64,000 nt of DNA, taken from Malacoraja senta. Its lineage: Eukaryota. The translations under genes and the position numbers were made by a program. Positions within the stretch are counted from its first letter, which is position 1; every line of letters begins with the position of its first letter. Below, piece after piece: positions 3,849 through 59,845 of this stretch. Where the stretch lies: assembly GCA_038087875.1 (NCBI GenBank), contig CM075978.1:176328001-176392000 (forward strand), in the 5' to 3' direction. The notes beneath the pieces were generated by a model. It did not search any database and was not told where the DNA came from. It was given only the letters and a program-made list of their open reading frames with translations.

Positions 3849-4130
3849 TGAGAACTCCACATGTAGTCTCGCCAAGTTTCTAAATAATTAAAGCAAGATA
3901 TTCTGCGTCCGTTGTAATAAAGACTAGCATAAATATTATTTCTTATTTCTTGCAATAACTTCAAGTTAATTGTTTTATATATGTACTAAATTTCCAACCA
4001 CTGCATTTCAGTGTTTATTGGTGTGGCCATTCAAATCAAATATCCTACTTTGCATTCTTTGGAATAGATACATTTCACTTCTGCATCCAATTCTCATCTT
4101 GCCCAATGGCTTATCCAGGCTGTAGCTTTT

Positions 4131-4223
4131 GTAGACAAAAGTGCTGGAGAAACTCAGCGGGTGCAGCAGCATCTATGGAGCGAAGGAAATGGACAACGCT
4201 TCGGGCCGAAACCCTTCTTCAGA
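4131..4223 (-). mobile_element. Penelope-like terminal fragment
   Basis: GTAGACAAAAGTGCTGGAGAAACTCAGCGGG...CCCTTCTTCAG, reverse complement of the tail at 38910-39004. Confidence 0.75.
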
Positions 4224-5327: not shown

Positions 5328-5550
5328 ATGTGTAGGAAGGGACTGCGGATGCTAGTTTACACCGAAGATACGGACACAATGCTGGAGTAACTCAGCGGGT
5401 TGGCAGCATCTTTGGAGAAAACGAAAAGATGACATTTCGGGTTGAGACCCTTCTTCAGACCGAAGAAGCGTCTCAACCCGAAACATCACCCATTCCCTTT
5501 CTCCAGAGATGCTGCCAGATCCGCTGAGTTATTCAACATTTCGTTTCTGT
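5328..5550. mobile_element. Fold-back Penelope-derived insertion
   Basis: Inverted arms centred near 5459; 14-bp TSD CTCA(C/T)CAATTTAAT at 5314-5327 and 5551-5564. Confidence 0.8.
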
Positions 5551-6109
5551 CTCATCAATTTAATCTTCATCTATCTTCAATGAATTCTGCAGCATTCCCT
5601 GAAAAGTATTCTCGTTAAGATGCAGTGCTTTTTTTCTTCCTTTCATCCCAAATATAAATCTGACGGATTGTGTGAGAACCACATACAAGCAAACCTACCT
5701 TCAAGTGAATCTGAATTATTTTTGTTGCCAGTTTCCACAATGATGTTTATTGCATATACAATTTTCAGAGTTGGATTATAATTTACTGTTTTATAATGGT
5801 GTTAGTCAGAGTTGACTGTACAAGAATAAGAATGCAAAACAAAAGATGATAAAGGAATTCCTTTTCCCCCAAACGCTGGCTGTAGAGCTCATAACTCGCT
5901 TTGCCTTTTATCAAGAGAAACTAGATAATTCTGCAATATTCAGTAAATATATTGGGAGTTTTGCTGGGCTCGGTGGTAAGTTAACAGTGCAAAGCTGAGG
6001 TTTGAAGTTATTTTGTGCAGTGAGGTTCATCCAGACTTATCCAAATAAGTTGACCATAAGTACTATGGTGTATAAAATTTTCAAAAACATTGAATTCTCC
6101 AATTTTAGG

Positions 6110-17481: not shown

Positions 17482-17620
17482 TGTAGGAAAGAACTACAGA
17501 TGCTGGGTTAAATTGAAGGTAGACAAAAAATGCTGGAGTAACTCAGCGGGTCAGGCAGCATCTCTGATGATCCAGAGATGCCGCTTGTCCTGCTGAGTTA
17601 CTCAAGCATTTTGTGTCTAC
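17482..17620. mobile_element. Fold-back Penelope-derived insertion
   Basis: Inverted arms centred near 17569; 15-bp TSD CTATT(G/A)AACATCATG at 17467-17481 and 17621-17635. Confidence 0.8.
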
Positions 17621-18704
17621 CTATTAAACATCATGATATATTTTAAAGGAATCATGGGATGTGTCATGGAGGTTAAAGATCAGCCATGATTTCAGTGTGA
17701 TTAGACCAATGGGCTAAATGGGCAACTCATCTATTTTTCCAAGTTCTTATATATGTTAAATGGTGGTTGTTTTATAATTAGTGCAATTTATACAGCCCTC
17801 AAGTTGTTAACGGAATTATAGATATTGTAAGCAGGTATGTGCAAATAGATTAGGGACGGAGGAGCTGTGCTCACACCAGTGGCTTCAGTGCCAGACATTC
17901 CAACGTAAAGGGAGTAAACTGTAAAGGGGGTGTTTTCATTTAGGGATCGATTGATACATTATGACGAGACCTTGGATAGTTTGCTGCTTACTGAGACACT
18001 CCAACAAACGTCTCTCAGCTTTAGCTCCTCACTGCATTGGTAATACTTTAGTTGAATTTTGGAACCAGATGGTCCGATGCGCTATTTTTCGAGTTCTTAA
18101 CCGGCAGTAATAGTCACAGTCCCTCTTCAGTCTGAATTTCTTATTTTAATGTTGGCAAAAATAAATTTTATGAAAGCAGGAAAATATTTTGGAATGTGCT
18201 TTATTAATCCTAATGTATAAAATGCTGTTCTATAGTGCTATGCACAACTTTGGATCGTAAGCAGATGTCTCAAATATTATTACATCTAAGGTTTACATAC
18301 AATTTTGTTTCAAAGTTTGATAGGTGTTCTGGACCCTTCCAGACCTCTGCAATTCTATGATTTCCCTTTCCACCCACCCTGTCCATCCCACACTTAAGCC
18401 CTTATATGCAGCTACTCTGTTAAAACCTATGCAACGAGCACTCAACATGTTTCATAATTCCTACATTAAATGTTGTGGATGGACACATTTAATCGTCACA
18501 CCCGATTTTATCCCCAGAATTTTATCAACAGAAATTGGCAAGCCACCTTGATGGTATATCCCTTCTGATTTTAGCTGTTTGTTGTATCTGGTGAGACAGC
18601 CATGCAGCCTGTACTAAAGTACAGTTTTGTTTGAAATACCAAGCCCAATAAGTGGACCAGAGTCAAGATTCTTTTGAGCTCGAAGATAGAGTAACTTAAT
18701 TAAT

Positions 18705-18836
18705 CTGAAAATGGGTCTTGACCCGAAACGTCACCCATTCCTTCTCTCCAGAGATGCTGCGTGTCCCGCTGAGTTACTTCAGCATTTTGTGTCTATCTTC
18801 GGTTTAAACCAGCATCTGCAGTTCCTTCCTACACAT
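18705..18836 (+). mobile_element. Penelope-like terminal fragment with degenerate hammerhead core and full tail
   Basis: CTGAAAATGGGTCTTGACCCGAAACGTC...CAGCATCTGCAGTTCCTTCCTACACA. Confidence 0.75.
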
Positions 18837-34560: not shown

Positions 34561-36754
34561 CATGATGTTAAATCTTCTGCCTCAAAAAGAGACCATATCA
34601 GGAGATCTGAGACATGTTAATGATCATTTTCAAGGAATTAGATGACTGCTGCAGTAGTTGTCGTCATAATGATCTTGTGAAGTGTCTCCCAAGTGGCCAA
34701 AGTATTCCTAAAGTAGGAACATAGATAACATCCTCCAGACATTTCTGCTCAATCCACAGTAGTTGAGTGGCAATGTACAGATAATGCAAAAGTTTGATAT
34801 GCCTGGAAGCTGAGCGCTGAAGTATAATTGACTTGTTCAGCAAAGCATATGGGAGGATGGATTTTGTACTCAACCTGATCCCTCTGAACCATGTTGCCCT
34901 CAACATTAGAGATCCTCGTCATGATCCTGGAAAGTGTAGATTACTTTCCTTGGTTGGTGCATTCTTCCAAGTTTGTATCCGAACATTGAGACTGTTTATA
35001 TTCTATCAGCTCTGGGTGGATGAACAACATAGTTCTTGCGTCTCACAGAGTAGAATTATGATACAACCGTGACACAACTGATCAGGAGATAAACTTGCTG
35101 GTTGGAGCATCTCAGTAATGATAGTTGAATAAATGTTACCACTTGAGTGCAGCTTGACCGTTAGAACTTCAACACTGCGGCAGCAATGGCAACAGAAACA
35201 GAAAATATCGGAAGCACTCAGTAGTCAAGAAGCATCCTTGGGGATTGAGAGAGGTCATTGGTGCACGTCGTGGACCTTTCTTCAAAGCAAGTCTGAAACT
35301 TTAACTTTTTCTCAACCCATGGATACATTCTGACATGCTGGGGTGCTTCCAGCAATTTAATTTTTTTCTCACAATTCCAACATTTGCAGTTTTGCTCCAA
35401 CACCAGTGGCTATCTTTTTGCACAAATTCATTGATTTTTGAGTTACTAATATCCAGGAAAATTTGATGACAAAATAAAAAATACCAGGAGTGGTCCATTT
35501 GGATCCATGAACTTTCTGGATCCATTTAATAAATTATCTGATCCGATGTTGGCCTCTGCTCCACTTTCTAGCCTTCTACTCATAATCCTTAACTTCCATA
35601 TGACTGAAAATCTGTTTAGCTAAGCTAAACCTTGAAAATATCAAGTGACTTACCCCATGTAATGTTCTGGCATAGAGAATTTCAAAGATTCTTGATTCTG
35701 AGAAAAGTGTTTCCTATTCCCTGTTTTAAAGAAGTAACCCCCCCAATCCCCCATTCTGACACCTTTGTTCTAGATTTCTCCATGAACAAATAGCCTCTCA
35801 CATCTATCTCATTCATTGTGCCCTATCAAACTCATGGGCTCAATAGTAGCAGCAAATTTTGTCATACATCTGGAGTTTTTCAGTACTGATTTTTTGGATG
35901 TGTTGGGGGAGGTAGTGTTGGGAGAGAGAAAAAGTATTTTGCATTGAGGAGTATTAAAGTCATTCTGATGGCAAAACTAAATTCACAAAGTAATGAAATA
36001 TCGCTTACGTGGTTCTATCTGTTAGCTCCACTTATCACTCCGGTTGTCAGTTGAGTAGGGAAATGATAAGCACTTCCGTAGAATATAAACTTTGAATGTG
36101 CTGATCTGTCTGTCTCTTGAAGGCCTTTCACCTGTAAGAATAGAGGTATGAAAAATGTAATTATTATGCTGGGGTCAGTTGAGCTTGATTTTTATGGGCG
36201 CATTCAGGATGAAGCTTACGTAGTTTCAACTCAAGGAAATTGAATGCAAGGAAATTGGGATTAATTTACAGAGGTTTGTGCAACTGAAGCTACAAATTTG
36301 TTTTAAATATTATTTCCTTATGGACCTTGTCCAATTTGTAATTTTTGAATGGGACATATTGCACCATGCAGTCAAACCATAAATGGATTCGACACTTCCA
36401 GTGGGATGTAGGGCATAGAGACAAGAGAATTATAATCTAGCTTTAGTGCCTTCAGTGCCTTTACCTTATTGCTGCTGAGGTATTGTACACGTAGGCATCT
36501 TATTGAAAATAGGTCCACATTGGGCTACTTAGATTAGTATCTTCTGATGAACTCGAGAACCTTTTGACATTTGTAGAAATGAGCAGCCATTTATGGCGTG
36601 TTTCATGAACACCTGGGATATAATTCTATCAGATTCGGGAGCTAGACATTTTACACTGCCATCTTTATAAATTGTTTTAAAGCCGGAGAACTTTGAAGAT
36701 TCAAGAATTTGCAGCTAAATTCGAATGTGAATATGTCATGGTTTTCCTATACAG

Positions 36755-36877
36755 GCCTTGTCTATGCTGCTAAATGGTACTCCGTTTGCCTTTGTTATTG
36801 ACCTTGCTGCACTTGCATCTCGCCGAGAATACCTCAAACTTGATAAATGGTTGACTGATAAAATCCGCGAACATGGG
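36755..36877 (+). CDS. CNOT1: CNOT1 exon (ex15 eq.), [41 protein letters not shown]
   Basis: atacag|GCC...GGG|gtaagg; 123 nt. Confidence 0.97.
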
Positions 36878-37079
36878 GTAAGGTATCAGTGCTAATGTTT
36901 TTATTTAAATTGTTGTATTCATTCTGAGGTTATGCTGTTAATTGAGCAATCTTTATTAAATTACAAAATTTGTGATGTTAAATTTGTGCACTTGGAATTT
37001 ACTATAAACGTAACGATATAGGGAAATGCCTCAATCACTTTCAATTTGCTGATAATTTTGGACTGTATAATTTGTGCAG

Positions 37080-38240
37080 AATAGCATGTTGCTGAACAAA
37101 AATGAAATTGCATCAGAGCTGAGGAACAAGAAAGGGATGGTCACCTTGCTACAGGCGTACTACAGGCCCCCAAATAGTCAACGGGAATCAGAAGAGCAAA
37201 TGTGTCAGGAGATTGCATGCAGCTGCAGGTCTAATAAGGTTGTTGTAGTAGGATATTTTAACTTTCACAGCATTGTCTAGGAATGTCATATTGCGACAGG
37301 TTTAGACGAGGTGGAATTTGTCAAATATGTTCAGGAGAATTTCCTCCGGCAATATGTAAAGGACCCACGTGGGAGAGGGCAACACTTGATCTAGTCTTGG
37401 GAAATTGGGATAGGCAAGTGGATGAAGTGTTCATGGATGAGCCTTTTGGGACCAACGGCCACTGTTCTATTAGGTTTAAAATAGTTATGGATACTGATGG
37501 ACCACGAGTTAAAATGCTAAATTGGAGCAAGGCCAACTTTGAGAGCATGAGAGGAACCCTCTCAAGTTGTTTGGAGTTGGTTGTTTGATGAAAAAGGAAC
37601 GTCAGGAAAGTGGGACGTTTTTAAGTGCGCTGACAAGAATTCAGGACATGCACGTCCCTGTAGAGTAACGGGCAAGGCAGGTAAGCGCAAGGAAGCCTGG
37701 ATGACGAGAGAAATTGAGGCTTTGGTCAAGAGTAAAAAGGAAGCATGGGTCGGGTATAGGCAGCTGGGATTAAGTGTGTCCCTGGAGAAGTTTGGGGAAC
37801 TAAGCTTAAAAAAAGGAAATCGGAAAGGCAAAAGGGGCAGGAGATAGCTCTGGCAGATAGTATTGAGGATAATCCCAAGAGATTGTATAAGCACATAAAT
37901 GGGAAAAAAAGGTAACCAGAGAGAGAGTGCGACCCCACAGGAGTCAAAGCGGTCAACTCTGTGTGAAGGCAAAGTCCTCAGAGAGTATTTCTCCTCTGTT
38001 TTTACTGTGGAGAAAGACAGGAGGATGGAGGAACTTGGGGTAGTCACTGGAAATGTCTTGAGAGCATTTGGTATTGCGGTTGTAGAGGTGCTGAAGGTCC
38101 TGACGCGTATGAAGGTAGATCCCGTGCTGGGTCAGATATATTCAAGGACACCATGGGAAGCTAGAGAAGAAATTGCAGGAGCTCTCACTTTTAGACAGGT
38201 ACATGGAGAGGACAGGTTTAGAGGGATACGGGCCAAACAC
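37080..38240 (+). mobile_element. CR1 LINE ORF2 fragment (AP endonuclease/linker)
   Basis: YYRPPNS...VVVGYFNF, PTWERATLDLVLGN, LNWSKANF, EYFSSVFT. Confidence 0.85.
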
Positions 38241-38544
38241 AGGCAGGTGAGCTGTTTAGAAATATTTGTATTTGAAAGGTTTGTTGCAAATAGAACGGCA
38301 CAGAACAGCTACCTGAACAAACCAAATGCAAGGTTCTGCTTGCTGTTCCTCTGGATGTTGATTTCCAGTCATTTTACTGGAACTTTGCCGGTGCCTACAC
38401 CTGGCGACACTTGTGTACTGCCTAGATTGTATGCACAACAAAACATTTCACTGTACCTAGGTACATGTGACAAATGTATTTTTATTTTTTCATTCATTTA
38501 ATGCGTGGGCCGGATGACTCTCAGCAGAACATATGCCTGAATCT

Positions 38545-39004
38545 CGGTGAGACCAAGCGGAGGCTTGGCGATCGTTTCGCCGAACACCTCCGGTCGGTCC
38601 GCAATAACCAACCTGAACTCCCGGTGGCTCAGCACTTCAACTCCCCCTCCCATTCCGTATCTGACCTCTCTGTCCTGGGTCTCCTCCATGGCCACAGCGA
38701 GCAACACCGTAAATTGGAGGAAATGCACCTCATATTCCGCTTGGGCAGTCTACACCCTGGTGGCCTGAACGTTGAATTCTCCCAATTCTGCTAGCCCTGG
38801 CTGTCCCCTCCCCTTCATCAGCCATCTGGTTGTCTCCTCCCCTCCCCCAACCCTCGGGCTCCTCCTCCTCCTTTTCCTTTTTTCCTTTCTTCTCCCCACC
38901 CCCTATCAGTCTGAAGAAGGGTTTCGGCCCGAAACGTTACCTATTTCCTTCGCTCCATAAGATGCTGCTGCACCCGCTGAGTTTCTCCAGCATTTTTGTG
39001 TACC
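38545..39004 (+). mobile_element. Penelope-like element 3' fragment (GIY-YIG end plus pLTR)
   Basis: GETKRRLGDRFAEHLRSV...VAQHFNSPSHS; 11-bp TSD TGCCTGAATCT at 38534-38544 and 39005-39015. Confidence 0.9.
38911..38938 (+). ncRNA. Minimal type-I hammerhead ribozyme motif (Penelope-associated)
   Basis: CUGAAGA-A-GGGU(UUCG)GCCC-GAAA-CGUU; stem I pairing weak. Confidence 0.6.
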
Positions 39005-39168
39005 TGCCTGAATCTTAACCTTTGGCCGTTTGTCTTGTCATTCTTAGCTGAAATAAAAATGTTTGTGATTAGTTGTGGTGGTTATTTTCCTTCCTTTGTT
39101 TTCCTCCTTCTCCCATTATTGAAGCTTGGAATAAGATGTCCGTCTCAGCTGAATTTTTATTTTGTTAG

Positions 39169-39320
39169 GAACCATTTATCCAGGCATGTGTTACGTTCCT
39201 GAAGAGACGGTGTCCTTCTATAATGGGTGGGCTGGCTCCTGAAAAGGAACAACCCAAGAGTGCTCAACTTCCTCCTGAAACACTGGCTACCATGCTGGCT
39301 TGCCTACAGGCTTGTGCAGG
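39169..39320 (+). CDS. CNOT1: CNOT1 exon (ex16 eq.), [16 protein letters not shown]...LACLQACA(G)
   Basis: tgttag|GAA...GCAGG|gtaagg; 152 nt, phase 0/2. Confidence 0.97.
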
Positions 39321-39813
39321 GTAAGGAAACACTGTATAATTTTACTTTGGAAAGAAAAAATATCTTTTTCCCAATTGCCACAAGTTACTAGTTCTTAATT
39401 ATTTGTGTTCTGATGCATTATAAAATGGGAAGTCTATATCTAAGCTGGTTAGCTGCAATCACAGAAAACTCAATGTAGGCATGTAGGTTTTGTGCTGTGC
39501 CGTCTGAAAGTTGCTTTGGCGACAAGAATGCTGAAATTATATGGCAGTTAGTTTAGGCTCCCTACACCAGCCCTGGTTGTTGCTGTAGGTTGCAAAAACA
39601 TCTACGTGCTTCATAATACCTTCTGATGGAAACAAAGCAAGCTGTAGGTTTGTATCTGTTGACGTTAGACCTGTGCTTGGTCTGGTCAACTAGTTTTCAC
39701 TTTTACAGATATTTAGTTTAATCAGATTCTGTTGCCATTGACTTTATTTTGCATGATAAAAATATTGCAAATGATAAGGCTTTTTTAAACATTCCTATTC
39801 CTTTTTCTCTCAG

Positions 39814-39964
39814 GAGTGTGTCTCAGGAGCTATCGGAGACTATTCTTACAATGGTGGCTAACTGTGGCAATGTCATGAACAAAGCCCGCCAGCCACCTCC
39901 AGGAGTAATGCCCAAGGTCCGCGCACCTAGTACCAGCAGTATAGAAACCATGTCGCCTGTACAG
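39814..39964 (+). CDS. CNOT1: CNOT1 exon (ex17 eq.), (G)[17 protein letters not shown]...TMSPVQ
   Basis: ctctcag|G AGT...CAG|gtaaaa; 151 nt, phase 2/0. Confidence 0.97.
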
Positions 39965-40646
39965 GTAAAAATAGTTACATGGTACAAGATTGTCCTGTTT
40001 CTTTAATATGCTTATGCAGGACCTGATAAGTCCTTATTCAATTTTGATCAATAAAAACACGAAGATTTAACATTTGAAAAATTGATTAAATTACATTCAA
40101 ATGTTGAAAAGAGAATATCTGTTTTTAAAAATAATCAGGTTCAATGCTTATTTGGATGTTATAGTACATTAGCTTACCATGCAAGACCATGATTTGAACT
40201 GCAGATTGGTGCTGTAATTGATAATTATTTAAAATAATTTAACAAATATTCCCATTACATTTTTTAAATGGAGAAATATTCCTATGTTCTGCATTGACGC
40301 CATTTCCATGTATGACTTTGAAACTGAAATGAAAATTTTAGAAAACTCAGCAAACCAAGTAACAAAAGAAATAGGGAGGAATGCTTGATCATCTATCCTA
40401 AAATGTTTACTCTGCTTTCCCTTTTCTGTAGACAATGTGTTTGCGTGTACAATAAATTAGAGGTTTATCAGAATACTGCCTGGATTAGAGGGTATTGGGT
40501 ATAAGGAGAGGTTGGGCAGACTTGGATTGTTTCCTCTAGAACACTGGAGGAAAAGGAAGACCCGATAGAAGTATATGAAATGATGCAAGGCATAGATAGG
40601 CTAGACAGTCAGAGCCTTTTCCCCAGTGTGGAAATGTCAAAGACTT

Positions 40647-40800: not shown

Positions 40801-41403
40801 CAATCCCAAACGGTGTACATCTTTGTGCAAATGAATTGAATCAAACATACACTTGGATCTCACAAATCATTATACATGTCACAGGGCTACCTTTTATTCA
40901 TTATCATTGCACCATTATGTCTTTAGTACAATATATGCCCACCATGGTTGTTTATTGTTTTTGGCATGGAATCACTCAGATTCTGACAGTTGGAGGATTT
41001 TTTCATCTTGATACCACAACTGAATTATGGTCTCGGTGATCTGCTATCTAGTGGTACAGTCCTTTCTTTTCACTCTCTCCTTGATAATTGACCACAAATT
41101 CTGAATAAGACTTGGGTCAGGCATGTTACCAGGCCAGTCCAGTGGTTGGTGTGAATTCAGTGGACCAAAGGGCTTGTTTCCATGCTATATTTTTACATTA
41201 GACTAGAGGTCAAAGCTTTGAGGTGAAGGGGGTTAAATTTACAGGAGATGTGCAGAAGGTGGTGTGTGCCTAGAATGTGCTGCATTTTGTGGTGGTAGGT
41301 ATGATAGTGGTGTATAAGAGGCTTTTAGATAGGCACATGGATACACAGGGAAATAGAGGGGTATGGATCACATACAGACTGATGAGATTAGTTTATATTG
41401 TCC

Positions 41404-41820
41404 GTAGACAAAAATGCTGGAGAAACTCAGTGGGTGAGGCAGATTCTATGGAGCGAAGGAATAGGTGACGTTTCGGGTCGAGACCCTTCTTCAGACTGAT
41501 GTGGGGGTGGGGGGGAGGGGCGAAAAGAAGAAAGGAAGAGGCGGAGACAGTGGGCTGTGGGAGAGCTGGGAAGGGGACGGAGGGAGAAAGCAAGGACTAC
41601 CTGAAATTGGTGAAATCAATGTTCATACCGCTGCGATGTAAACTACCCAAGCGAATTATGAGGTGCTGCTCCTCCAATTTGCAGTGGGACTCACTGGCCA
41701 TGGAGGAGGCCCAGGACAGAAAGGTCGGATTCGGAATGTGGGGGGGGGGAGTTGAAGTGCTGAGCCACCGGGAGATCAGGTTGGTTAATGCGAACTGAGC
41801 GGAGATTTTGGACGAAGTGA
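41404..41820 (-). mobile_element. Penelope-like element 3' fragment (antisense)
   Basis: Reverse complement aligns with 38585-39004 and 59390-59810; intact hammerhead core at 41467-41494. Confidence 0.88.
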
Positions 41821-42834
41821 TTGCCAAGCCTAACACTACCCAAAAGATGATTGCATGATTAAAGCTAAATCGGGTGATTCAGATCTTTATTAATTGATGC
41901 AGTAACACACAGTACATCTCCACCTTCCTGGATTCCTCTTGGGTACTTCATCCCAAAGAGAGAAGGAAGTCCTGATAACTGTTTTGTGCATCCATTTTCC
42001 CCAAATAAAGTGCAAAAATCACATATTTCTATCTTGTCCAATGTAGATGTACAACTTCTTTCTGTAAAGTACTAGTTGTAGCTTTTTACCCAATTTTCAT
42101 ACTCCCCTACCCTGCTAATTTCATTTGGGCATATGGCTTTTCATGACCGATTATTTTTCAGCCTGATATAGAGGAAAAACTTGCACTGGTCCAAATTCTT
42201 TCTCATTGTTGTGGACGGGTTTATTGTGTATGGCTAGCTCAAGCTTCACATCCAAATCTGGGTTTGTGGGAAAGGAATTTTAGCTGAAATATGAGGGAAG
42301 GAGGAGGTTCTTTCAGTGGAGAAAGTAAAGGAAGAAAAAACTTCGAACAAGGAAGCAAAAACAGGTCGAGGCAAACTTGTGTAATCTCCTGCCAAGAGAG
42401 TTAAAAAGTATTTTGCTGCTTTCCATTTTATGGCTGAAGTAAGGGAAGGATGAAATTATTTCAACTGAAAATAGCACAATGTTTGCGGAAAAGAGGCATT
42501 TAAATTTTGGATTGCATCGTTAATCAGAACTGATTTTCATGTTATATTTGCTAATAAAATAATGTTATAAGTTGGTTCAAATATATAGCCTGTTGGTCAA
42601 CTATTTTTAGCTATTTTAAGAAAGTATACTGACATAGGGGAAGAGTTGTAAGATTGTAGAATAGTTCTAGGGACTTCCACCCATAGGGAAAATTCACATC
42701 AAGCTTACAATTTATCAATCGGTTATTTTGCTTTAGATTTTTAGTAGTTAAAAGGTAATACAAAAATATGTTTTAAATTTTAATAATATTCTCTGGTTTT
42801 GATTTTATCTCCCACCTTGGTGCTCTCTTTATAG

Positions 42835-49983: not shown

Positions 49984-50141
49984 NNNNNNNNNNNNNNNNN
50001 NNNNNNNNNNNNNNNNNNNNNNNNNNNNNNNNNNNNNNNNNNNNNNNNNNNNNNNNNNNNNNNNNNNNNNNNNNNNNNNNNNNNNNNNNNNNNNNNNNNN
50101 NNNNNNNNNNNNNNNNNNNNNNNNNNNNNNNNNNNNNNNNN
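49984..50141. other. Assembly gap (158 N)
   Basis: Run of n. Confidence 1.
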
Positions 50142-57208: not shown

Positions 57209-57550
57209 TGTTTAAGAAAGAACTGCAGATGCTGGAAAAATTGAAGGTAGACAAATAATGCTGGAGAAACTCAGCGGGTGAGCACCTCACATTTCGCTTA
57301 GGTAGTTTACACCCCAGCGGTATGAACATTGACCTCTAATTTTAGATATCCCTTGCTTTCTCCCTCCTTCTCCTCCCCCTTCCCAGCTCTCCCACAAAAC
57401 CTACTGTCTCCTCCTCTTCCTTTCTTCTCCCCCCCGCCCCACCGACATCGGTCTGAAGAAGGGTCTCAACTCGAAACGTCACCCATTCCTTCTCTCAGAA
57501 ACTCAGCTGCTGCCTCACCCGCTGAGTTTCTCCAGCATTTTTTGTCTACC
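57209..57550. mobile_element. Penelope-derived insertion with inverted terminal segment
   Basis: Inverted tail 57209-57282, then sense GIY-YIG end/pLTR; perfect 15-bp TSD ATAGGTTACAGGGAA at 57194-57208 and 57551-57565. Confidence 0.88.
57453..57480 (+). ncRNA. Minimal type-I hammerhead ribozyme motif (Penelope-associated)
   Basis: GGU-CUGAAGA-A-GGGU(CUCA)ACUC-GAAA-CGUC-ACC; GUC triplet, 3-bp stem I. Confidence 0.6.
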
Positions 57551-58459
57551 ATAGGTTACAGGGAAATAATTGGGGGACTAATCAGCATGTTCTGAGTTAG
57601 CATATGCTTGAAGAATCCCTTCATAAATTGTAAGGAAACATGAAAAACCTCTCCCTCTCCCTCTCCCTCACACATTTCTCACTGTCTGTCGTATGTATTG
57701 TACATAACTGCAAATAGACCACTTTTGCTGTTAACCCTGGATTCTTTCAGGTATCTGCCAATGGCTCTTTCCTTATTCTTAACTAAAAACAAAATCATTG
57801 TTTGTCCTCGTCCACAAATTCTATTCCAATTCACCTTCATGAAATTGAACCTAATGATTTGCAACATTAGTTCTGATCCCAAACTGAGGATTTTTTTTTG
57901 CCTTTTCAACGGCATGACCTGAAATTTTTTTGTTTTTTGTTTGTTTCCCATCCCTCTCCCTATTCCTGTATCTGTCTTTCTTTCAAATACTCTCCTTAAA
58001 ATATCTCTGAACAATGTAATCTCTAATTTGATCTGTTTTTGTCTGTGAAGAGCTTTGGGATATTTGACTACTGTTTTTATTTTATTGGTTATGCAATTTT
58101 GCGAGTTGATTGGGGAACTTGGGCAAGTAGGAAAATTACAACATGTTAATCTTCGGATTTCACTCTGGTGAGGTACAGTACAAATGTGAGAATTTATAGC
58201 AAGGTCAAGGATTTGTATTACAATCACCCTGTCCATAGACTTGTTGATAAATGTGTTCTTCTGCTTCCATGTTTGAAGTGGTTATTTGTTCTGCTGTCGT
58301 GATAGCGATTCATAGAATTAATGAGCATAAAAGAAAGCAATTTGGCCCATCAATCCTCTTAGTTCTTTTATTCACCTGTCAAATTTTTACATGTGTCCAC
58401 TCCCCAAGCTATTCTTATTTATTTATATGATTTGTTCTCAATGTTACAATTGAATCTCC

Positions 58460-59845
58460 TCCAAATCCAAAGCGTGGCTGTGGGCACGCGCATGGGCCCC
58501 AGCTAGGCCTGTCTCTTTGTAGGGTACGTCGAACAATCCTTGTTCGAGGCGTACCGTGGCCCTATCCCTGAACTCTACCTCCACTACATTGACGACTGCA
58601 TTGGTGCTACCTCCTGCACCCATGCAGAACTCACTGACTTCATCCATTTCACCACTAACTTCCATCCGGCACTCAAATTCACCTGGACCATATCCCAACC
58701 GTTTCTAGACCTCACCATCTCCATCGCAGGTAACAGACTCTGATCGACATCTACTACAAACCCACTGACTCCCCTGGCTATCTGGACAACACTTCTTCCC
58801 ACCCTGCTTCCTGTAAAGACTCTATCCCCTACTCCCAATTCCTCCGTCTTCGCCGCATCTGCACCCAGGGTGAGGTGTTCCAGACCAGGGCATCGGAGAT
58901 GTCCTCATTCTTTAGGAAACAGGGGTTCCCCCTTCTATTATAGATGAGGCTCTCACCAGGGTCTCCTCTATATCCCGCAGCTCTGCTCTCACTCCCCATC
59001 CCCCTACTCGGAACAAAGACAGAGTCCCCCTTGTCCTCACCTTCCACCCTACCAGCCGTCGCATACAACATCTAATCCTCCGACATTTTCTCCACCTCCA
59101 ACGGGATCCCACCACTAGCCACATCTTTCTTTCTCCTCCCCTGTCTGCTATCTGCAGATACCTTTCCCTCCATAACTCCCTGGTCAATTCGTCCCTTCCC
59201 ACCCAAACCACCCCACCCCGGTACTTTCCCTTGCAACCGCAGGAAATGCTGCACTTGTTGCTTTACCTCCCTCCTCGACTCCATCCAATGACCCCAGCAG
59301 TCTTTCCAGGTGAGGCAGAGGTTCACCTGCACCTCCTCTACTGCATCTGCTGTTCCAGGTGTCAACTGCTCTACATCGGTGAGACCAACACCTCCGCTCA
59401 GTTCGCATAACCAACCTGATCTCCCGGTGGCTCAGCACTTCAACTCCCCCTCCCATTCTGAATCCGACCTTTCTGTCCTGGGCCTCCTCCATTGCCAGAG
59501 TGAGGCCCGGCGCAAATTGGAGGAACAGCACCTCATATTTCGCTTGGGTAGTGTACACCCCAGGAGTATGAACATTGACTTCTCTAATTTCAGGGAGTCC
59601 TTGCTTTCTCCCTCCTTCCCCTCCCCTTCCCAGCTCTCCCACAAGCCTACTGTCTCTGCTCCTTCCTTTCTAGCCCCCCCACCTCTTCAGACATCAGACC
59701 CTTCTTCAGACATCAGTCTGAAGAAGGGTCTCAACCCAAAACGTCGCCTATTCCTTTGCTCCATAGATGCTGCCTCACCCGCTGAGTTTCTCCAGCATTT
59801 TTGTCTACCTTCGATTTTTCCAGCATCTGCAGATCTTTCTTACAC
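58460..59845 (+). mobile_element. Penelope-like retroelement, 5'-truncated (RT plus GIY-YIG pseudogene)
   Basis: VAVGTRMGPS, LYLHYIDDCIGAT, FHPALKFT, PFLDL, YYKPTDS, IPYSQFLRLRRIC, VAQHFNSPSHS; 11-bp TSD ATTGAATCTCC at 58449-58459 and 59846-59856. Confidence 0.93.

What the first reader, a model, noticed from the sequence alone, without database searches (positions are those of the whole stretch)
38911..38938. Sense-oriented hammerhead ribozyme core ~230 nt upstream of a CNOT1 exon
Seen: CUGAAGA, a 4-bp stem II capped by UUCG, then GAAA-CGUU, inside a Penelope pLTR on the CNOT1 transcribed strand. Known: Penelope-like elements carry minimal type-I hammerheads with a palindromic (ACGU) stem III that cleave mainly as dimers. 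Inference: the gene for the deadenylase scaffold carries several potential self-cleaving motifs in its nascent RNA, which could pair with each other and affect co-transcriptional processing. Stem I pairing here is weak, so activity is uncertain.
Basis: partly seen in the sequence, partly recalled or inferred. Interest (0 to 1): 0.7.

Follow-up and report, generated by a model that had tools for sequence, protein, structure and literature searches.

The report
Relic Penelope hammerhead in CNOT1 intron
The motif is a real minimal hammerhead-ribozyme core, but it is the ordinary tail signature of a broken Penelope-like jumping gene that landed in a CNOT1 intron of a cartilaginous fish, and nothing suggests that it cuts the CNOT1 transcript.

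Summary
Window 38911-38938 (+) reads CUGAAGA, a bulged A, a 4-bp stem II with a UUCG loop, GAAA and CGUU. The predicted cut is after 38938, 231 nt upstream of the CNOT1 exon at 39169-39321, on the same strand.

A strict minimal-hammerhead descriptor finds 4 sites in the window and none in 300 shuffles. All four belong to one repeat family.

The motif lies 117 nt after the stop codon of a 5'-truncated GIY-YIG endonuclease ORF and about 67 nt before the element's 3' end. It is therefore the known Penelope-like element (PLE) minimal hammerhead (Cervera & De la Peña 2014), not a host device.

It is unlikely to act in this intron:
- It has no helix III in cis.
- Helix I has only 2 bp.
- The hammerhead fold has 0.3% or less probability in the predicted ensemble.
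- A copy-specific hairpin sequesters the GAAA box.
- Only one other intact sense core lies in the 64 kb, 18.5 kb away.
- An inverted copy 2.5 kb downstream can bury the motif in double-stranded RNA.

Published PLE hammerheads cleave poorly even as dimers.

The scan has already flagged this family on other DNA of this genome: 466 notes hold both search words. Interest is low.

The parts
38528..38794 (+). 5'-truncated ORF remnant of a Penelope-like element. [quoted passage not shown]
   Evidence: ORF listed. Copies in the window align from 38528-38583 onwards. There are 27 homologous fragments at E 1e-28 to 7e-9. 7 of the 23 sequences scanned (this fragment plus 22 homologues) hit Pfam GIY-YIG PF01541, best E 3e-6; this window fragment itself had no hit. 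Atlas neighbours are GIY-YIG and RT+GIY-YIG clusters.
38795..38908 (+). 3' non-coding region of the element. It is C/T-rich and ends in a roughly 50-nt pyrimidine tract plus CAG (38907-38909).
   Evidence: Sequence. It is homologous between copies. In predicted folds it pairs with the purine-rich GAAGAAGG of the core.
38909..38910 (+). 5' strand of helix I (G2.2, U2.1). It makes only 2 contiguous pairs, with A38939 and C38940.
   Evidence: Position 2.3 (A38908) faces C38941 unpaired here and in 7 of 9 copies; it is G-C in 2 copies.
38911..38917 (+). Hammerhead box CUGAAGA (C3 U4 G5 A6 N7 G8 A9), intact.
38918..38918 (+). Unpaired A between A9 and G10.1, a hallmark of PLE minimal hammerheads.
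   Evidence: It is A in 8 of the 9 aligned copies (T in 18693-18799+). The feature is named in PMC4209133.
38919..38930 (+). Helix II hairpin GGGU[UUCG]GCCC, with three G-C pairs and one U-G pair. It opens with G10.1-C11.1.
   Evidence: 97% of cells are paired across 9 copies, with only one-sided changes.
38931..38938 (+). GAA (G12-A14), the palindromic A15.1 C15.2 G16.2 U16.1, and U17. The predicted cleavage is after 38938.
   Evidence: There is no helix III in cis, so a second copy would be needed.
38939..39005 (+). Element tail after the cut site. It contains a conserved 8-bp hairpin (38960-38967 with 38988-38995). The element's 3' end is at about 39003-39006.
   Evidence: Copies end together in alignments A1 and A4. 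The hairpin is 91.5% paired in 9 copies.
39169..39321 (+). CNOT1 exon (human residues 610-660). It gives the context but is not part of the element.
57453..57480 (+). The only other sense-oriented copy with an intact core (GUC triplet, stem II with one G-U pair). It lies 18.5 kb downstream.
41401..41831 (-). Inverted copy of the same element family. It carries an intact core at 41467-41494 on the minus strand. In the pre-mRNA it is the complement of 38561-39003.
   Evidence: 77% identity over 447 nt. Duplex energy of the 108-nt tails is -182 kcal/mol, and of the 41 nt around the motif -74.9 kcal/mol.

Best explanation
The motif is the minimal type-I hammerhead that Penelope-like retrotransposons (PLEs) carry in their terminal non-coding region.

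Shown here: it belongs to one 5'-truncated, sense-oriented PLE insertion (about 38528-39005) in the 2.3-kb CNOT1 intron between exons 36749-36877 and 39169-39321.

From the literature: in the element's own RNA the motif is thought to act only when two copies lie together in tandem elements. Their ACGU tetrads then pair to build helix III. It may also need help from the element's protein, to process the transposon transcript.

Inferred for this solitary intronic copy: it is a passenger relic. It has no helix III partner, a 2-bp helix I and strongly competing folds, so it most likely does not cleave CNOT1 pre-mRNA and has no host function.
For: [quoted passage not shown]
- It is contiguous with a GIY-YIG ORF end. 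It lies a fixed distance from a shared 3' end in at least 9 copies on both strands.
- A longer copy (58540-59810) adds a YIDD reverse-transcriptase piece and a cysteine linker upstream of the GIY-YIG domain.
- Head-to-head inverted tail pairs at 5365-5553 and 17516-17623 match the PLE insertion signature described in PMC8557442.
- Other copies show mostly transition-type decay that breaks the core, several at CpG sites: G12A and 15.2 C>U at CpG, plus G8A, C3U and U4C. That is neutral behaviour.
- Inactivity is suggested by folding. The MFE is -9.4 kcal/mol against -4.2 for the hammerhead fold. Stem II probability is 0.3% or less and the GAAGA of the core is paired. The alternative hairpin GUUUCG/CGAAAC reaches 0.6-0.7 probability in the 149-nt context.
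- Literature: single PLE motifs show no detectable cleavage and dimers show low cleavage (PMC4209133). The Anolis PLE hammerhead needs the element's protein, and no RNA-seq ends map to its cut site (PMC11167929).
Against: - The core of this copy is fully intact and keeps all three CpGs, so it is not visibly decayed.
- The three substitutions that separate its subfamily (shared with 4195-4222) from the other copies all fall at positions a hammerhead tolerates: loop 2, U-A to U-G, and H17 C to U. This hints that source elements keep the motif functional.
- Thermodynamic predictions do not capture tertiary contacts, protein help or co-transcriptional folding.
- No RNA data were available.
Confidence: 0.88

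Rival explanations
1. The copy is catalytically active in CNOT1 pre-mRNA. It would dimerise through ACGU with another sense copy or another nascent transcript, or be assisted by PLE protein. Cleavage upstream of the exon would then modulate splicing or transcript yield, as proposed for domesticated intronic hammerheads of amniotes.
For: - The core is intact and H17 = U is allowed.
- A second intact sense core lies in the same transcript at 57453.
- There is precedent for intronic hammerheads derived from retroelements (PMC6155905) and for protein-assisted PLE hammerhead cleavage (PMC11167929).
Against: - Helix I has 2 bp.
- The trans helix III is worth only -4.3 kcal/mol, and the partner is 18.5 kb away.
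- The hammerhead fold has 0.3% or less of the ensemble.
- The amniote intronic ribozymes are full hammerheads with helix III and loop-loop contacts, which this motif lacks.
- The same repeat lies on both strands of this gene's introns with no sign of avoiding the sense strand: of the 9 high-scoring copies, 6 are on + and 3 on -.
- Conservation is untestable here. Distant vertebrates have a 180-nt intron without the element.
Confidence: 0.04
2. The insertion matters to CNOT1 through ordinary transposon effects on splicing and not through catalysis. One route is the sense-oriented pyrimidine tract plus CAG at 38860-38909 acting as a decoy 3' splice site. The other is the inverted pair 38561-39003 / 41831-41404 forming double-stranded RNA around two exons, which could promote back-splicing or exon skipping.
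For: - The tract and CAG are visible.
- The inverted pair is 77% identical over 447 nt, with a very stable predicted duplex.
- The pair flanks exons 39169-39321 and 39815-39979.
Against: No expression data are available. Such configurations are very common in repeat-rich introns and are usually silent. Splice-site strength was not scored.
Confidence: 0.07
3. The resemblance to a hammerhead is fortuitous. On this view the hairpin and flanking purines are just part of the structure that the element's reverse transcriptase recognises.
For: - No Rfam hammerhead hit.
- No compensatory covariation among the 9 window copies.
- Short tail-only copies begin just upstream of the core and not at the cut site.
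Against: - All 11 invariant core nucleotides are present, together with four extra PLE-specific features not needed for a mere hairpin (PMC4209133).
- There were 0 descriptor hits in 300 shuffles.
- Hammerheads are reported in all canonical PLE clades (PMC8557442).
Confidence: 0.02

Closest known systems
Minimal hammerheads (min-HHR) of metazoan Penelope-like elements (Cervera & De la Peña 2014, PMC4209133; Lünse, Weinberg & Breaker 2016, cited in PMC6765202)
   Same: - CUGANGA and GAAA boxes.
[quoted passage not shown]
- The G10.1-C11.1 pair.
- No helix III in cis, with a palindromic ACGU.
- A short helix I.
- Location in the terminal non-coding region next to an RT/GIY-YIG ORF.
- Mostly solitary copies from truncated elements.
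   Different: - Helix II is 4 bp, whereas 6-8 bp is described as typical.
- Helix I is only 2 bp in this copy. That matches the D. virilis variant, but 4-5 bp is the usual figure.
- The host is a cartilaginous fish. No paper I read names this family; the one Chondrichthyes genome in the 2026 preprint was surveyed for retrozymes.
Poseidon PLE of Anolis carolinensis (PAc) hammerhead (PMC11167929)
   Same: A vertebrate EN+ PLE with a hammerhead lacking helix III. The element has a tail downstream, set by internal initiation of reverse transcription. Self-cleavage alone is poor or absent.
   Different: In PAc the ORF start overlaps stem II, and cleavage was shown to be protein-assisted. Here no full-length element is in the window, so the relation to the ORF start is unknown and nothing was assayed.
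Conserved intronic hammerheads of amniotes (HH9/HH10 in RECK, CTCL, DTNB; De la Peña & García-Robles 2010, summarised in PMC6155905)
   Same: A sense-oriented type-I hammerhead inside an intron of a protein-coding gene, with probable retroelement ancestry.
   Different: The amniote ribozymes are complete, with helix III and loop 1-loop 2 contacts. They are active as monomers, match Rfam models and are conserved at orthologous loci. This motif is a bare core in a repeat copy, with no Rfam match and no evidence of conservation.
Non-LTR retrozymes of animals (PMC7229834; bioRxiv 10.64898/2026.07.22.740005)
   Same: Hammerhead-bearing, PLE-related repeats.
   Different: Retrozymes are tandem non-coding units with canonical type-I hammerheads that give circular RNAs. 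This copy is a solitary coding-element fragment.

Membership tests
PLE minimal hammerhead (min-HHR) | Conserved core boxes C3U4G5A6N7G8A9 and G12A13A14, with A15.1, U16.1 and H17 | tested here: met
   38911-38917 is CUGAAGA and 38931-38938 is GAAACGUU.
PLE minimal hammerhead (min-HHR) | An unpaired nucleotide between A9 and G10.1 | tested here: met
   A38918; A in 8 of the 9 aligned copies (T in 18693-18799+). The feature is listed in PMC4209133.
PLE minimal hammerhead (min-HHR) | Helix II opening with G10.1-C11.1 | tested here: met
   G38919-C38930 opens a 4-bp stem. It is shorter than the 6-8 bp called typical.
PLE minimal hammerhead (min-HHR) | No helix III in cis, with palindromic 15.2/16.2 so that two copies can pair | tested here: met
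   ACGU at 38934-38937. The trans duplex is -4.3 kcal/mol.
PLE minimal hammerhead (min-HHR) | Helix I of about 4-5 bp (2 bp in the D. virilis variant) | tested here: inconclusive
   There are only 2 contiguous pairs, then a 2x2 mismatch, then 2 more pairs.
PLE minimal hammerhead (min-HHR) | Location in the terminal repeat or non-coding end of a PLE | tested here: met
   The motif starts 117 nt after the GIY-YIG ORF stop, and its cut site lies about 67 nt before the shared 3' end.
PLE minimal hammerhead (min-HHR) | Site-specific self-cleavage (as a dimer) | not testable with these tools
   This needs an in vitro assay or RNA end mapping.
Canonical type-I hammerhead (Rfam Hammerhead_1, HH9, HH10) | Three helices around the core, scoring at or above the Rfam gathering threshold | tested here: not met
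   No hammerhead family matched at gathering score or at E<=10 in 38700-39100.
Penelope-like element, EN+ (C-terminal GIY-YIG) | GIY-YIG endonuclease domain at the C-terminus of the ORF | tested here: met
   The fragment 38528-38794 has homologues at E 1e-28. 7 of the 23 sequences scanned (the fragment plus 22 homologues) hit PF01541, best E 3e-6; the window fragment alone is below threshold.
Penelope-like element, EN+ (C-terminal GIY-YIG) | Telomerase-like reverse transcriptase upstream of the endonuclease | tested here: inconclusive
   It is absent from this truncated copy. The related copy at 58540-59810 shows a YIDD-containing piece upstream of the endonuclease, but it gave no Pfam hit. 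Atlas structural neighbours include RVT_1+GIY-YIG clusters.
Penelope-like element, EN+ (C-terminal GIY-YIG) | pLTRs, or inverted 5'-truncated partner copies | tested here: inconclusive
   There is no second repeat at this copy. Inverted head-to-head tail pairs occur elsewhere in the window, at 5365-5553 and 17516-17623.
Domesticated intronic hammerhead | Conservation at the orthologous intron across species | not testable with these tools
   Only distant vertebrate contigs were retrievable. Their intron is about 180 nt and lacks the element.

The most novel reading that the evidence does not exclude
This intact, sense-oriented PLE hammerhead, possibly with the second intact core at 57453 or with help from PLE-encoded protein, does cleave nascent CNOT1 RNA 231 nt upstream of an exon. 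Transposon activity would then be coupled to the output of the main deadenylase scaffold.
Probability: 0.04. Interest if true: 0.6.

Novelty: new member of a known kind. Interest (0 to 1): 0.12.

Why it matters
As it stands it matters little. It is one more relic copy of a hammerhead-bearing Penelope-like element, a class described in 2014, in a genome where the same tail repeat is extremely abundant.

It is still useful as a documented example. A perfectly intact catalytic core can sit in the sense strand of an essential gene's intron without any sign of counter-selection. That fits the very low intrinsic activity reported for these minimal ribozymes.

If locus-specific RNA ends were ever found at the predicted bond, it would be a rare case of a transposon ribozyme acting on a host pre-mRNA.

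Tried and rejected
- Rfam at gathering score over the whole window and at E<=10 over 38700-39100 gave no hammerhead hit. The weak hits (ctRNA, sR35 and others) are chance.
- Pfam on the window's own ORF fragments gave nothing for 38474-38794 and only a sub-threshold GIY-YIG hit (E 0.081) for the 59231-59407 piece. This was resolved through homologues.
- A profile of the endonuclease fragments against PDB sequences gave no hit.
- Orthologous introns were sought through exact-protein look-ups of four exon-bearing fragments. All are distant species or spliced transcripts, and only exons align. Conservation of the insertion stays untested.
- Lünse et al. 2016 (PMC5785218) is not held. It is cited only through the review PMC6765202.
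- Covariation was counted on the 9 window copies. There was no change on both sides of any pair, and the counts did not differ from shuffles. This is uninformative, because the copies are neutral relics of one family.
- I considered whether 57282-57551 and 59387-59810 are the two pLTRs of one element. I rejected this. The first copy ends at 57551 and is followed by unrelated DNA. The second copy starts at about 58540 within the reverse transcriptase.

Full report
**Observation**

The + strand at 38911-38938 reads CUGAAGA, A, GGGU-UUCG-GCCC, GAAA, CGU, U. In standard hammerhead numbering:
- C3-A9 is 38911-38917.
- An unpaired A is at 38918.
- Helix II is G38919-C38930, G38920-C38929, G38921-C38928 and U38922-G38927, closed by UUCG.
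- G12 A13 A14 is 38931-38933.
- A15.1 C15.2 G16.2 U16.1 is 38934-37, the self-complementary tetrad ACGU.
- H17 is U38938, so the predicted scissile bond is 38938/38939.

I wrote a descriptor requiring the core, an optional bulge, a helix II of at least 4 bp opening with G-C, GAAA, a pairable 15.2/16.2, U16.1 and H17. It finds four sites in the window (38911+, 57453+, 41467-, 5431-) and none in 300 dinucleotide-preserving shuffles. The loose pattern CTGANGA-N(4-30)-GAAAC alone is not significant, with 3 matches against 1.25 expected. All three of those matches are nonetheless the same repeat. No Rfam hammerhead model matches at gathering score or at E<=10 locally. No Rfam model reported this motif, which has no helix III in cis.

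**Genomic context**

Translating 39169-39321 (+) gives a 51-residue peptide that matches human CNOT1 residues 610-660 at E 4.9e-28. A full-length CNOT1 representative (P0032) maps by tblastn to 18 + strand segments from 6550 (aa 70) to 61897 (aa 987). The motif therefore lies in the sense strand of the 2,291-nt intron between exons 36749-36877 and 39169-39321. It is 231 nt upstream of the acceptor.

**What the motif belongs to**

An ORF remnant ends at 38794, 117 nt upstream of the motif. From about 38528 it is homologous to other copies in the window and to 27 protein fragments at E 1e-28 to 7e-9. I scanned this fragment together with 22 of those homologues against Pfam. 7 of the 23 sequences hit GIY-YIG, best E 3e-6; they are homologues, since the window fragment itself had no hit. 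The window fragment starts inside the YIG..R..EH segment, so it is a 5'-truncated endonuclease domain.

Protein-atlas neighbours are GIY-YIG clusters and eukaryotic RT+GIY-YIG clusters. A longer copy at 58540-59810 adds a YIDD reverse-transcriptase piece and a cysteine linker upstream of the GIY-YIG domain.

Downstream of the motif the copies share about 67 nt and then end together at about 39003-39006. A covariance model of motif plus tail finds 9 strong copies (96-124 bits) and about 10 decayed ones on both strands. Head-to-head inverted tail pairs at 5365-5553 and 17516-17623 are the arrangement described for Penelope-like elements (PMC8557442). The element is therefore a Penelope-like retrotransposon. 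This copy is a solitary 5'-truncated insertion, so 'pLTR' is only loosely right.

**Comparison with the known PLE hammerhead**

Cervera & De la Peña (PMC4209133) list four features of PLE minimal hammerheads that were not built into their search:
- families with covariation;
- the G10.1-C11.1 pair;
- palindromic 15.2-16.2.

The last three are met here. Covariation cannot be judged from nine relic copies (no change on both sides of any pair). Helix II is shorter than their typical 6-8 bp. Helix I has only 2 contiguous pairs (U38910-A38939 and G38909-C38940), like their D. virilis variant.

This copy and the copy at 4195-4222 differ from the other copies at three positions inside the motif: loop 2 C to U, helix II U-A to U-G, and H17 C to U. 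All three are tolerated by a hammerhead. By my rough count, about 29% of single substitutions in the 28-mer are tolerated, so three in a row has a chance of about 2%. This is a weak hint that source elements maintain the motif.

**Likelihood of activity in this intron**

Among the nine aligned copies, only 38911+, 57453+ and 41467- keep an unaltered core. 5431- also passes the descriptor, with a 15.2 C>U change. The other sense copies carry:
- G8A (18704);
- G12A (59712);
- C3U plus A15.1G (3546);
- U4C plus 16.2 G>A (5455).

Most are transitions, several at CpG sites, which is neutral decay. The two intact sense cores are 18.5 kb apart, and a trans contact limited to the ACGU tetrads is worth -4.3 kcal/mol.

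For this copy the minimum-energy fold of 38895-38960 is -9.4 kcal/mol, against -4.2 kcal/mol for the hammerhead-constrained fold. In three contexts of 66-469 nt:
- Helix II has 0.3% or less probability.
- Helix I has about 0 probability.
- The GAAGA of the core is paired with the flanking C/U-rich tracts.
- In the 149-nt context, the copy-specific hairpin GUUUCG/CGAAAC, which sequesters the GAAA box, has 0.6-0.7 probability.

The inverted copy at 41401-41831 is 77% identical over 447 nt. It can pair with the whole region in the same pre-mRNA. The predicted duplex is -74.9 kcal/mol for the 41 nt around the motif and -182 kcal/mol for the 108-nt tails.

The literature agrees on weak activity. 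Single PLE motifs did not cleave, and dimers cleaved poorly (PMC4209133). The review PMC6765202 reaches the same conclusion. The Anolis PLE hammerhead needed the element's protein, was dispensable for insertion in vitro, and left no RNA-seq ends at its cut site (PMC11167929).

**What could not be done**

Orthologous introns of close relatives were not retrievable. Four exon-bearing contigs from other species align only in exons, and one has a 180-nt intron without the element.

**Earlier notes of the scan**

A word search returned 466 notes in this genome holding 'hammerhead' and 'Penelope'. They include follow-ups that call the repeat the tail of a Penelope-like element in a ray or skate. One reports that many tail-only copies begin at the first base of the hammerhead. 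In this window, two of nine copies (4128-4223 on the minus strand and 18704-18799 on the plus strand) lose homology one base upstream of C3. It also shows that these 5' ends are not at the ribozyme's cut site.

**Verdict**

The functional inference for CNOT1 is unsupported and, on the available evidence, unlikely. This is a new copy of a known kind of element. The N run at 49984-50141 was left untouched.

Noticed in passing
window 5365-5553 and 17516-17623: These are head-to-head inverted pairs of PLE tail pieces. At 5365-5553 the two arms meet just upstream of their hammerhead cores, forming a palindrome of about 190 bp. At 17516-17623 only the last ~46 nt of the tail are present in each arm.
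   Followed up: partly
window 4128-4223 (-) and 18704-18799 (+): These tail-only copies lose homology to the family one base upstream of C3 of the hammerhead (they start at T-CTGAAG). The 5' end is at the start of the motif and not at its cut site. The preceding family sequence TCAGTC resembles an initiator element, and the CAG resembles a splice acceptor.
   Followed up: partly
window 38860-38909: A roughly 50-nt pyrimidine tract ending in CAG lies in the sense of CNOT1, 260 nt upstream of the authentic acceptor at 39168. It is a possible decoy 3' splice site brought in by the element.
   Followed up: no
window 38561-39003 (+) with 41404-41831 (-): An inverted pair of the same PLE family, 77% identical over 447 nt, flanks CNOT1 exons 39169-39321 and 39815-39979 (153 + 165 nt, in frame).
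   Followed up: partly
window 37074-37600 (+): A LINE-like apurinic-endonuclease ORF fragment (Exo_endo_phos_2, E 0.021) sits directly upstream of the PLE fragment, in the same orientation. The order of the two insertions was not resolved.
   Followed up: no
window 58540-59810 (+): A longer 5'-truncated PLE copy runs from the YIDD reverse-transcriptase motif to the tail, with several frameshifts. Its hammerhead carries G12A.
   Followed up: partly
window 38960-38995: An 8-bp hairpin in the element's tail (AGAUGCUG with CAGCAUUU) is kept in 9 copies, with 91.5% of cells paired. It may be a recognition structure for the element's reverse transcriptase.
   Followed up: partly
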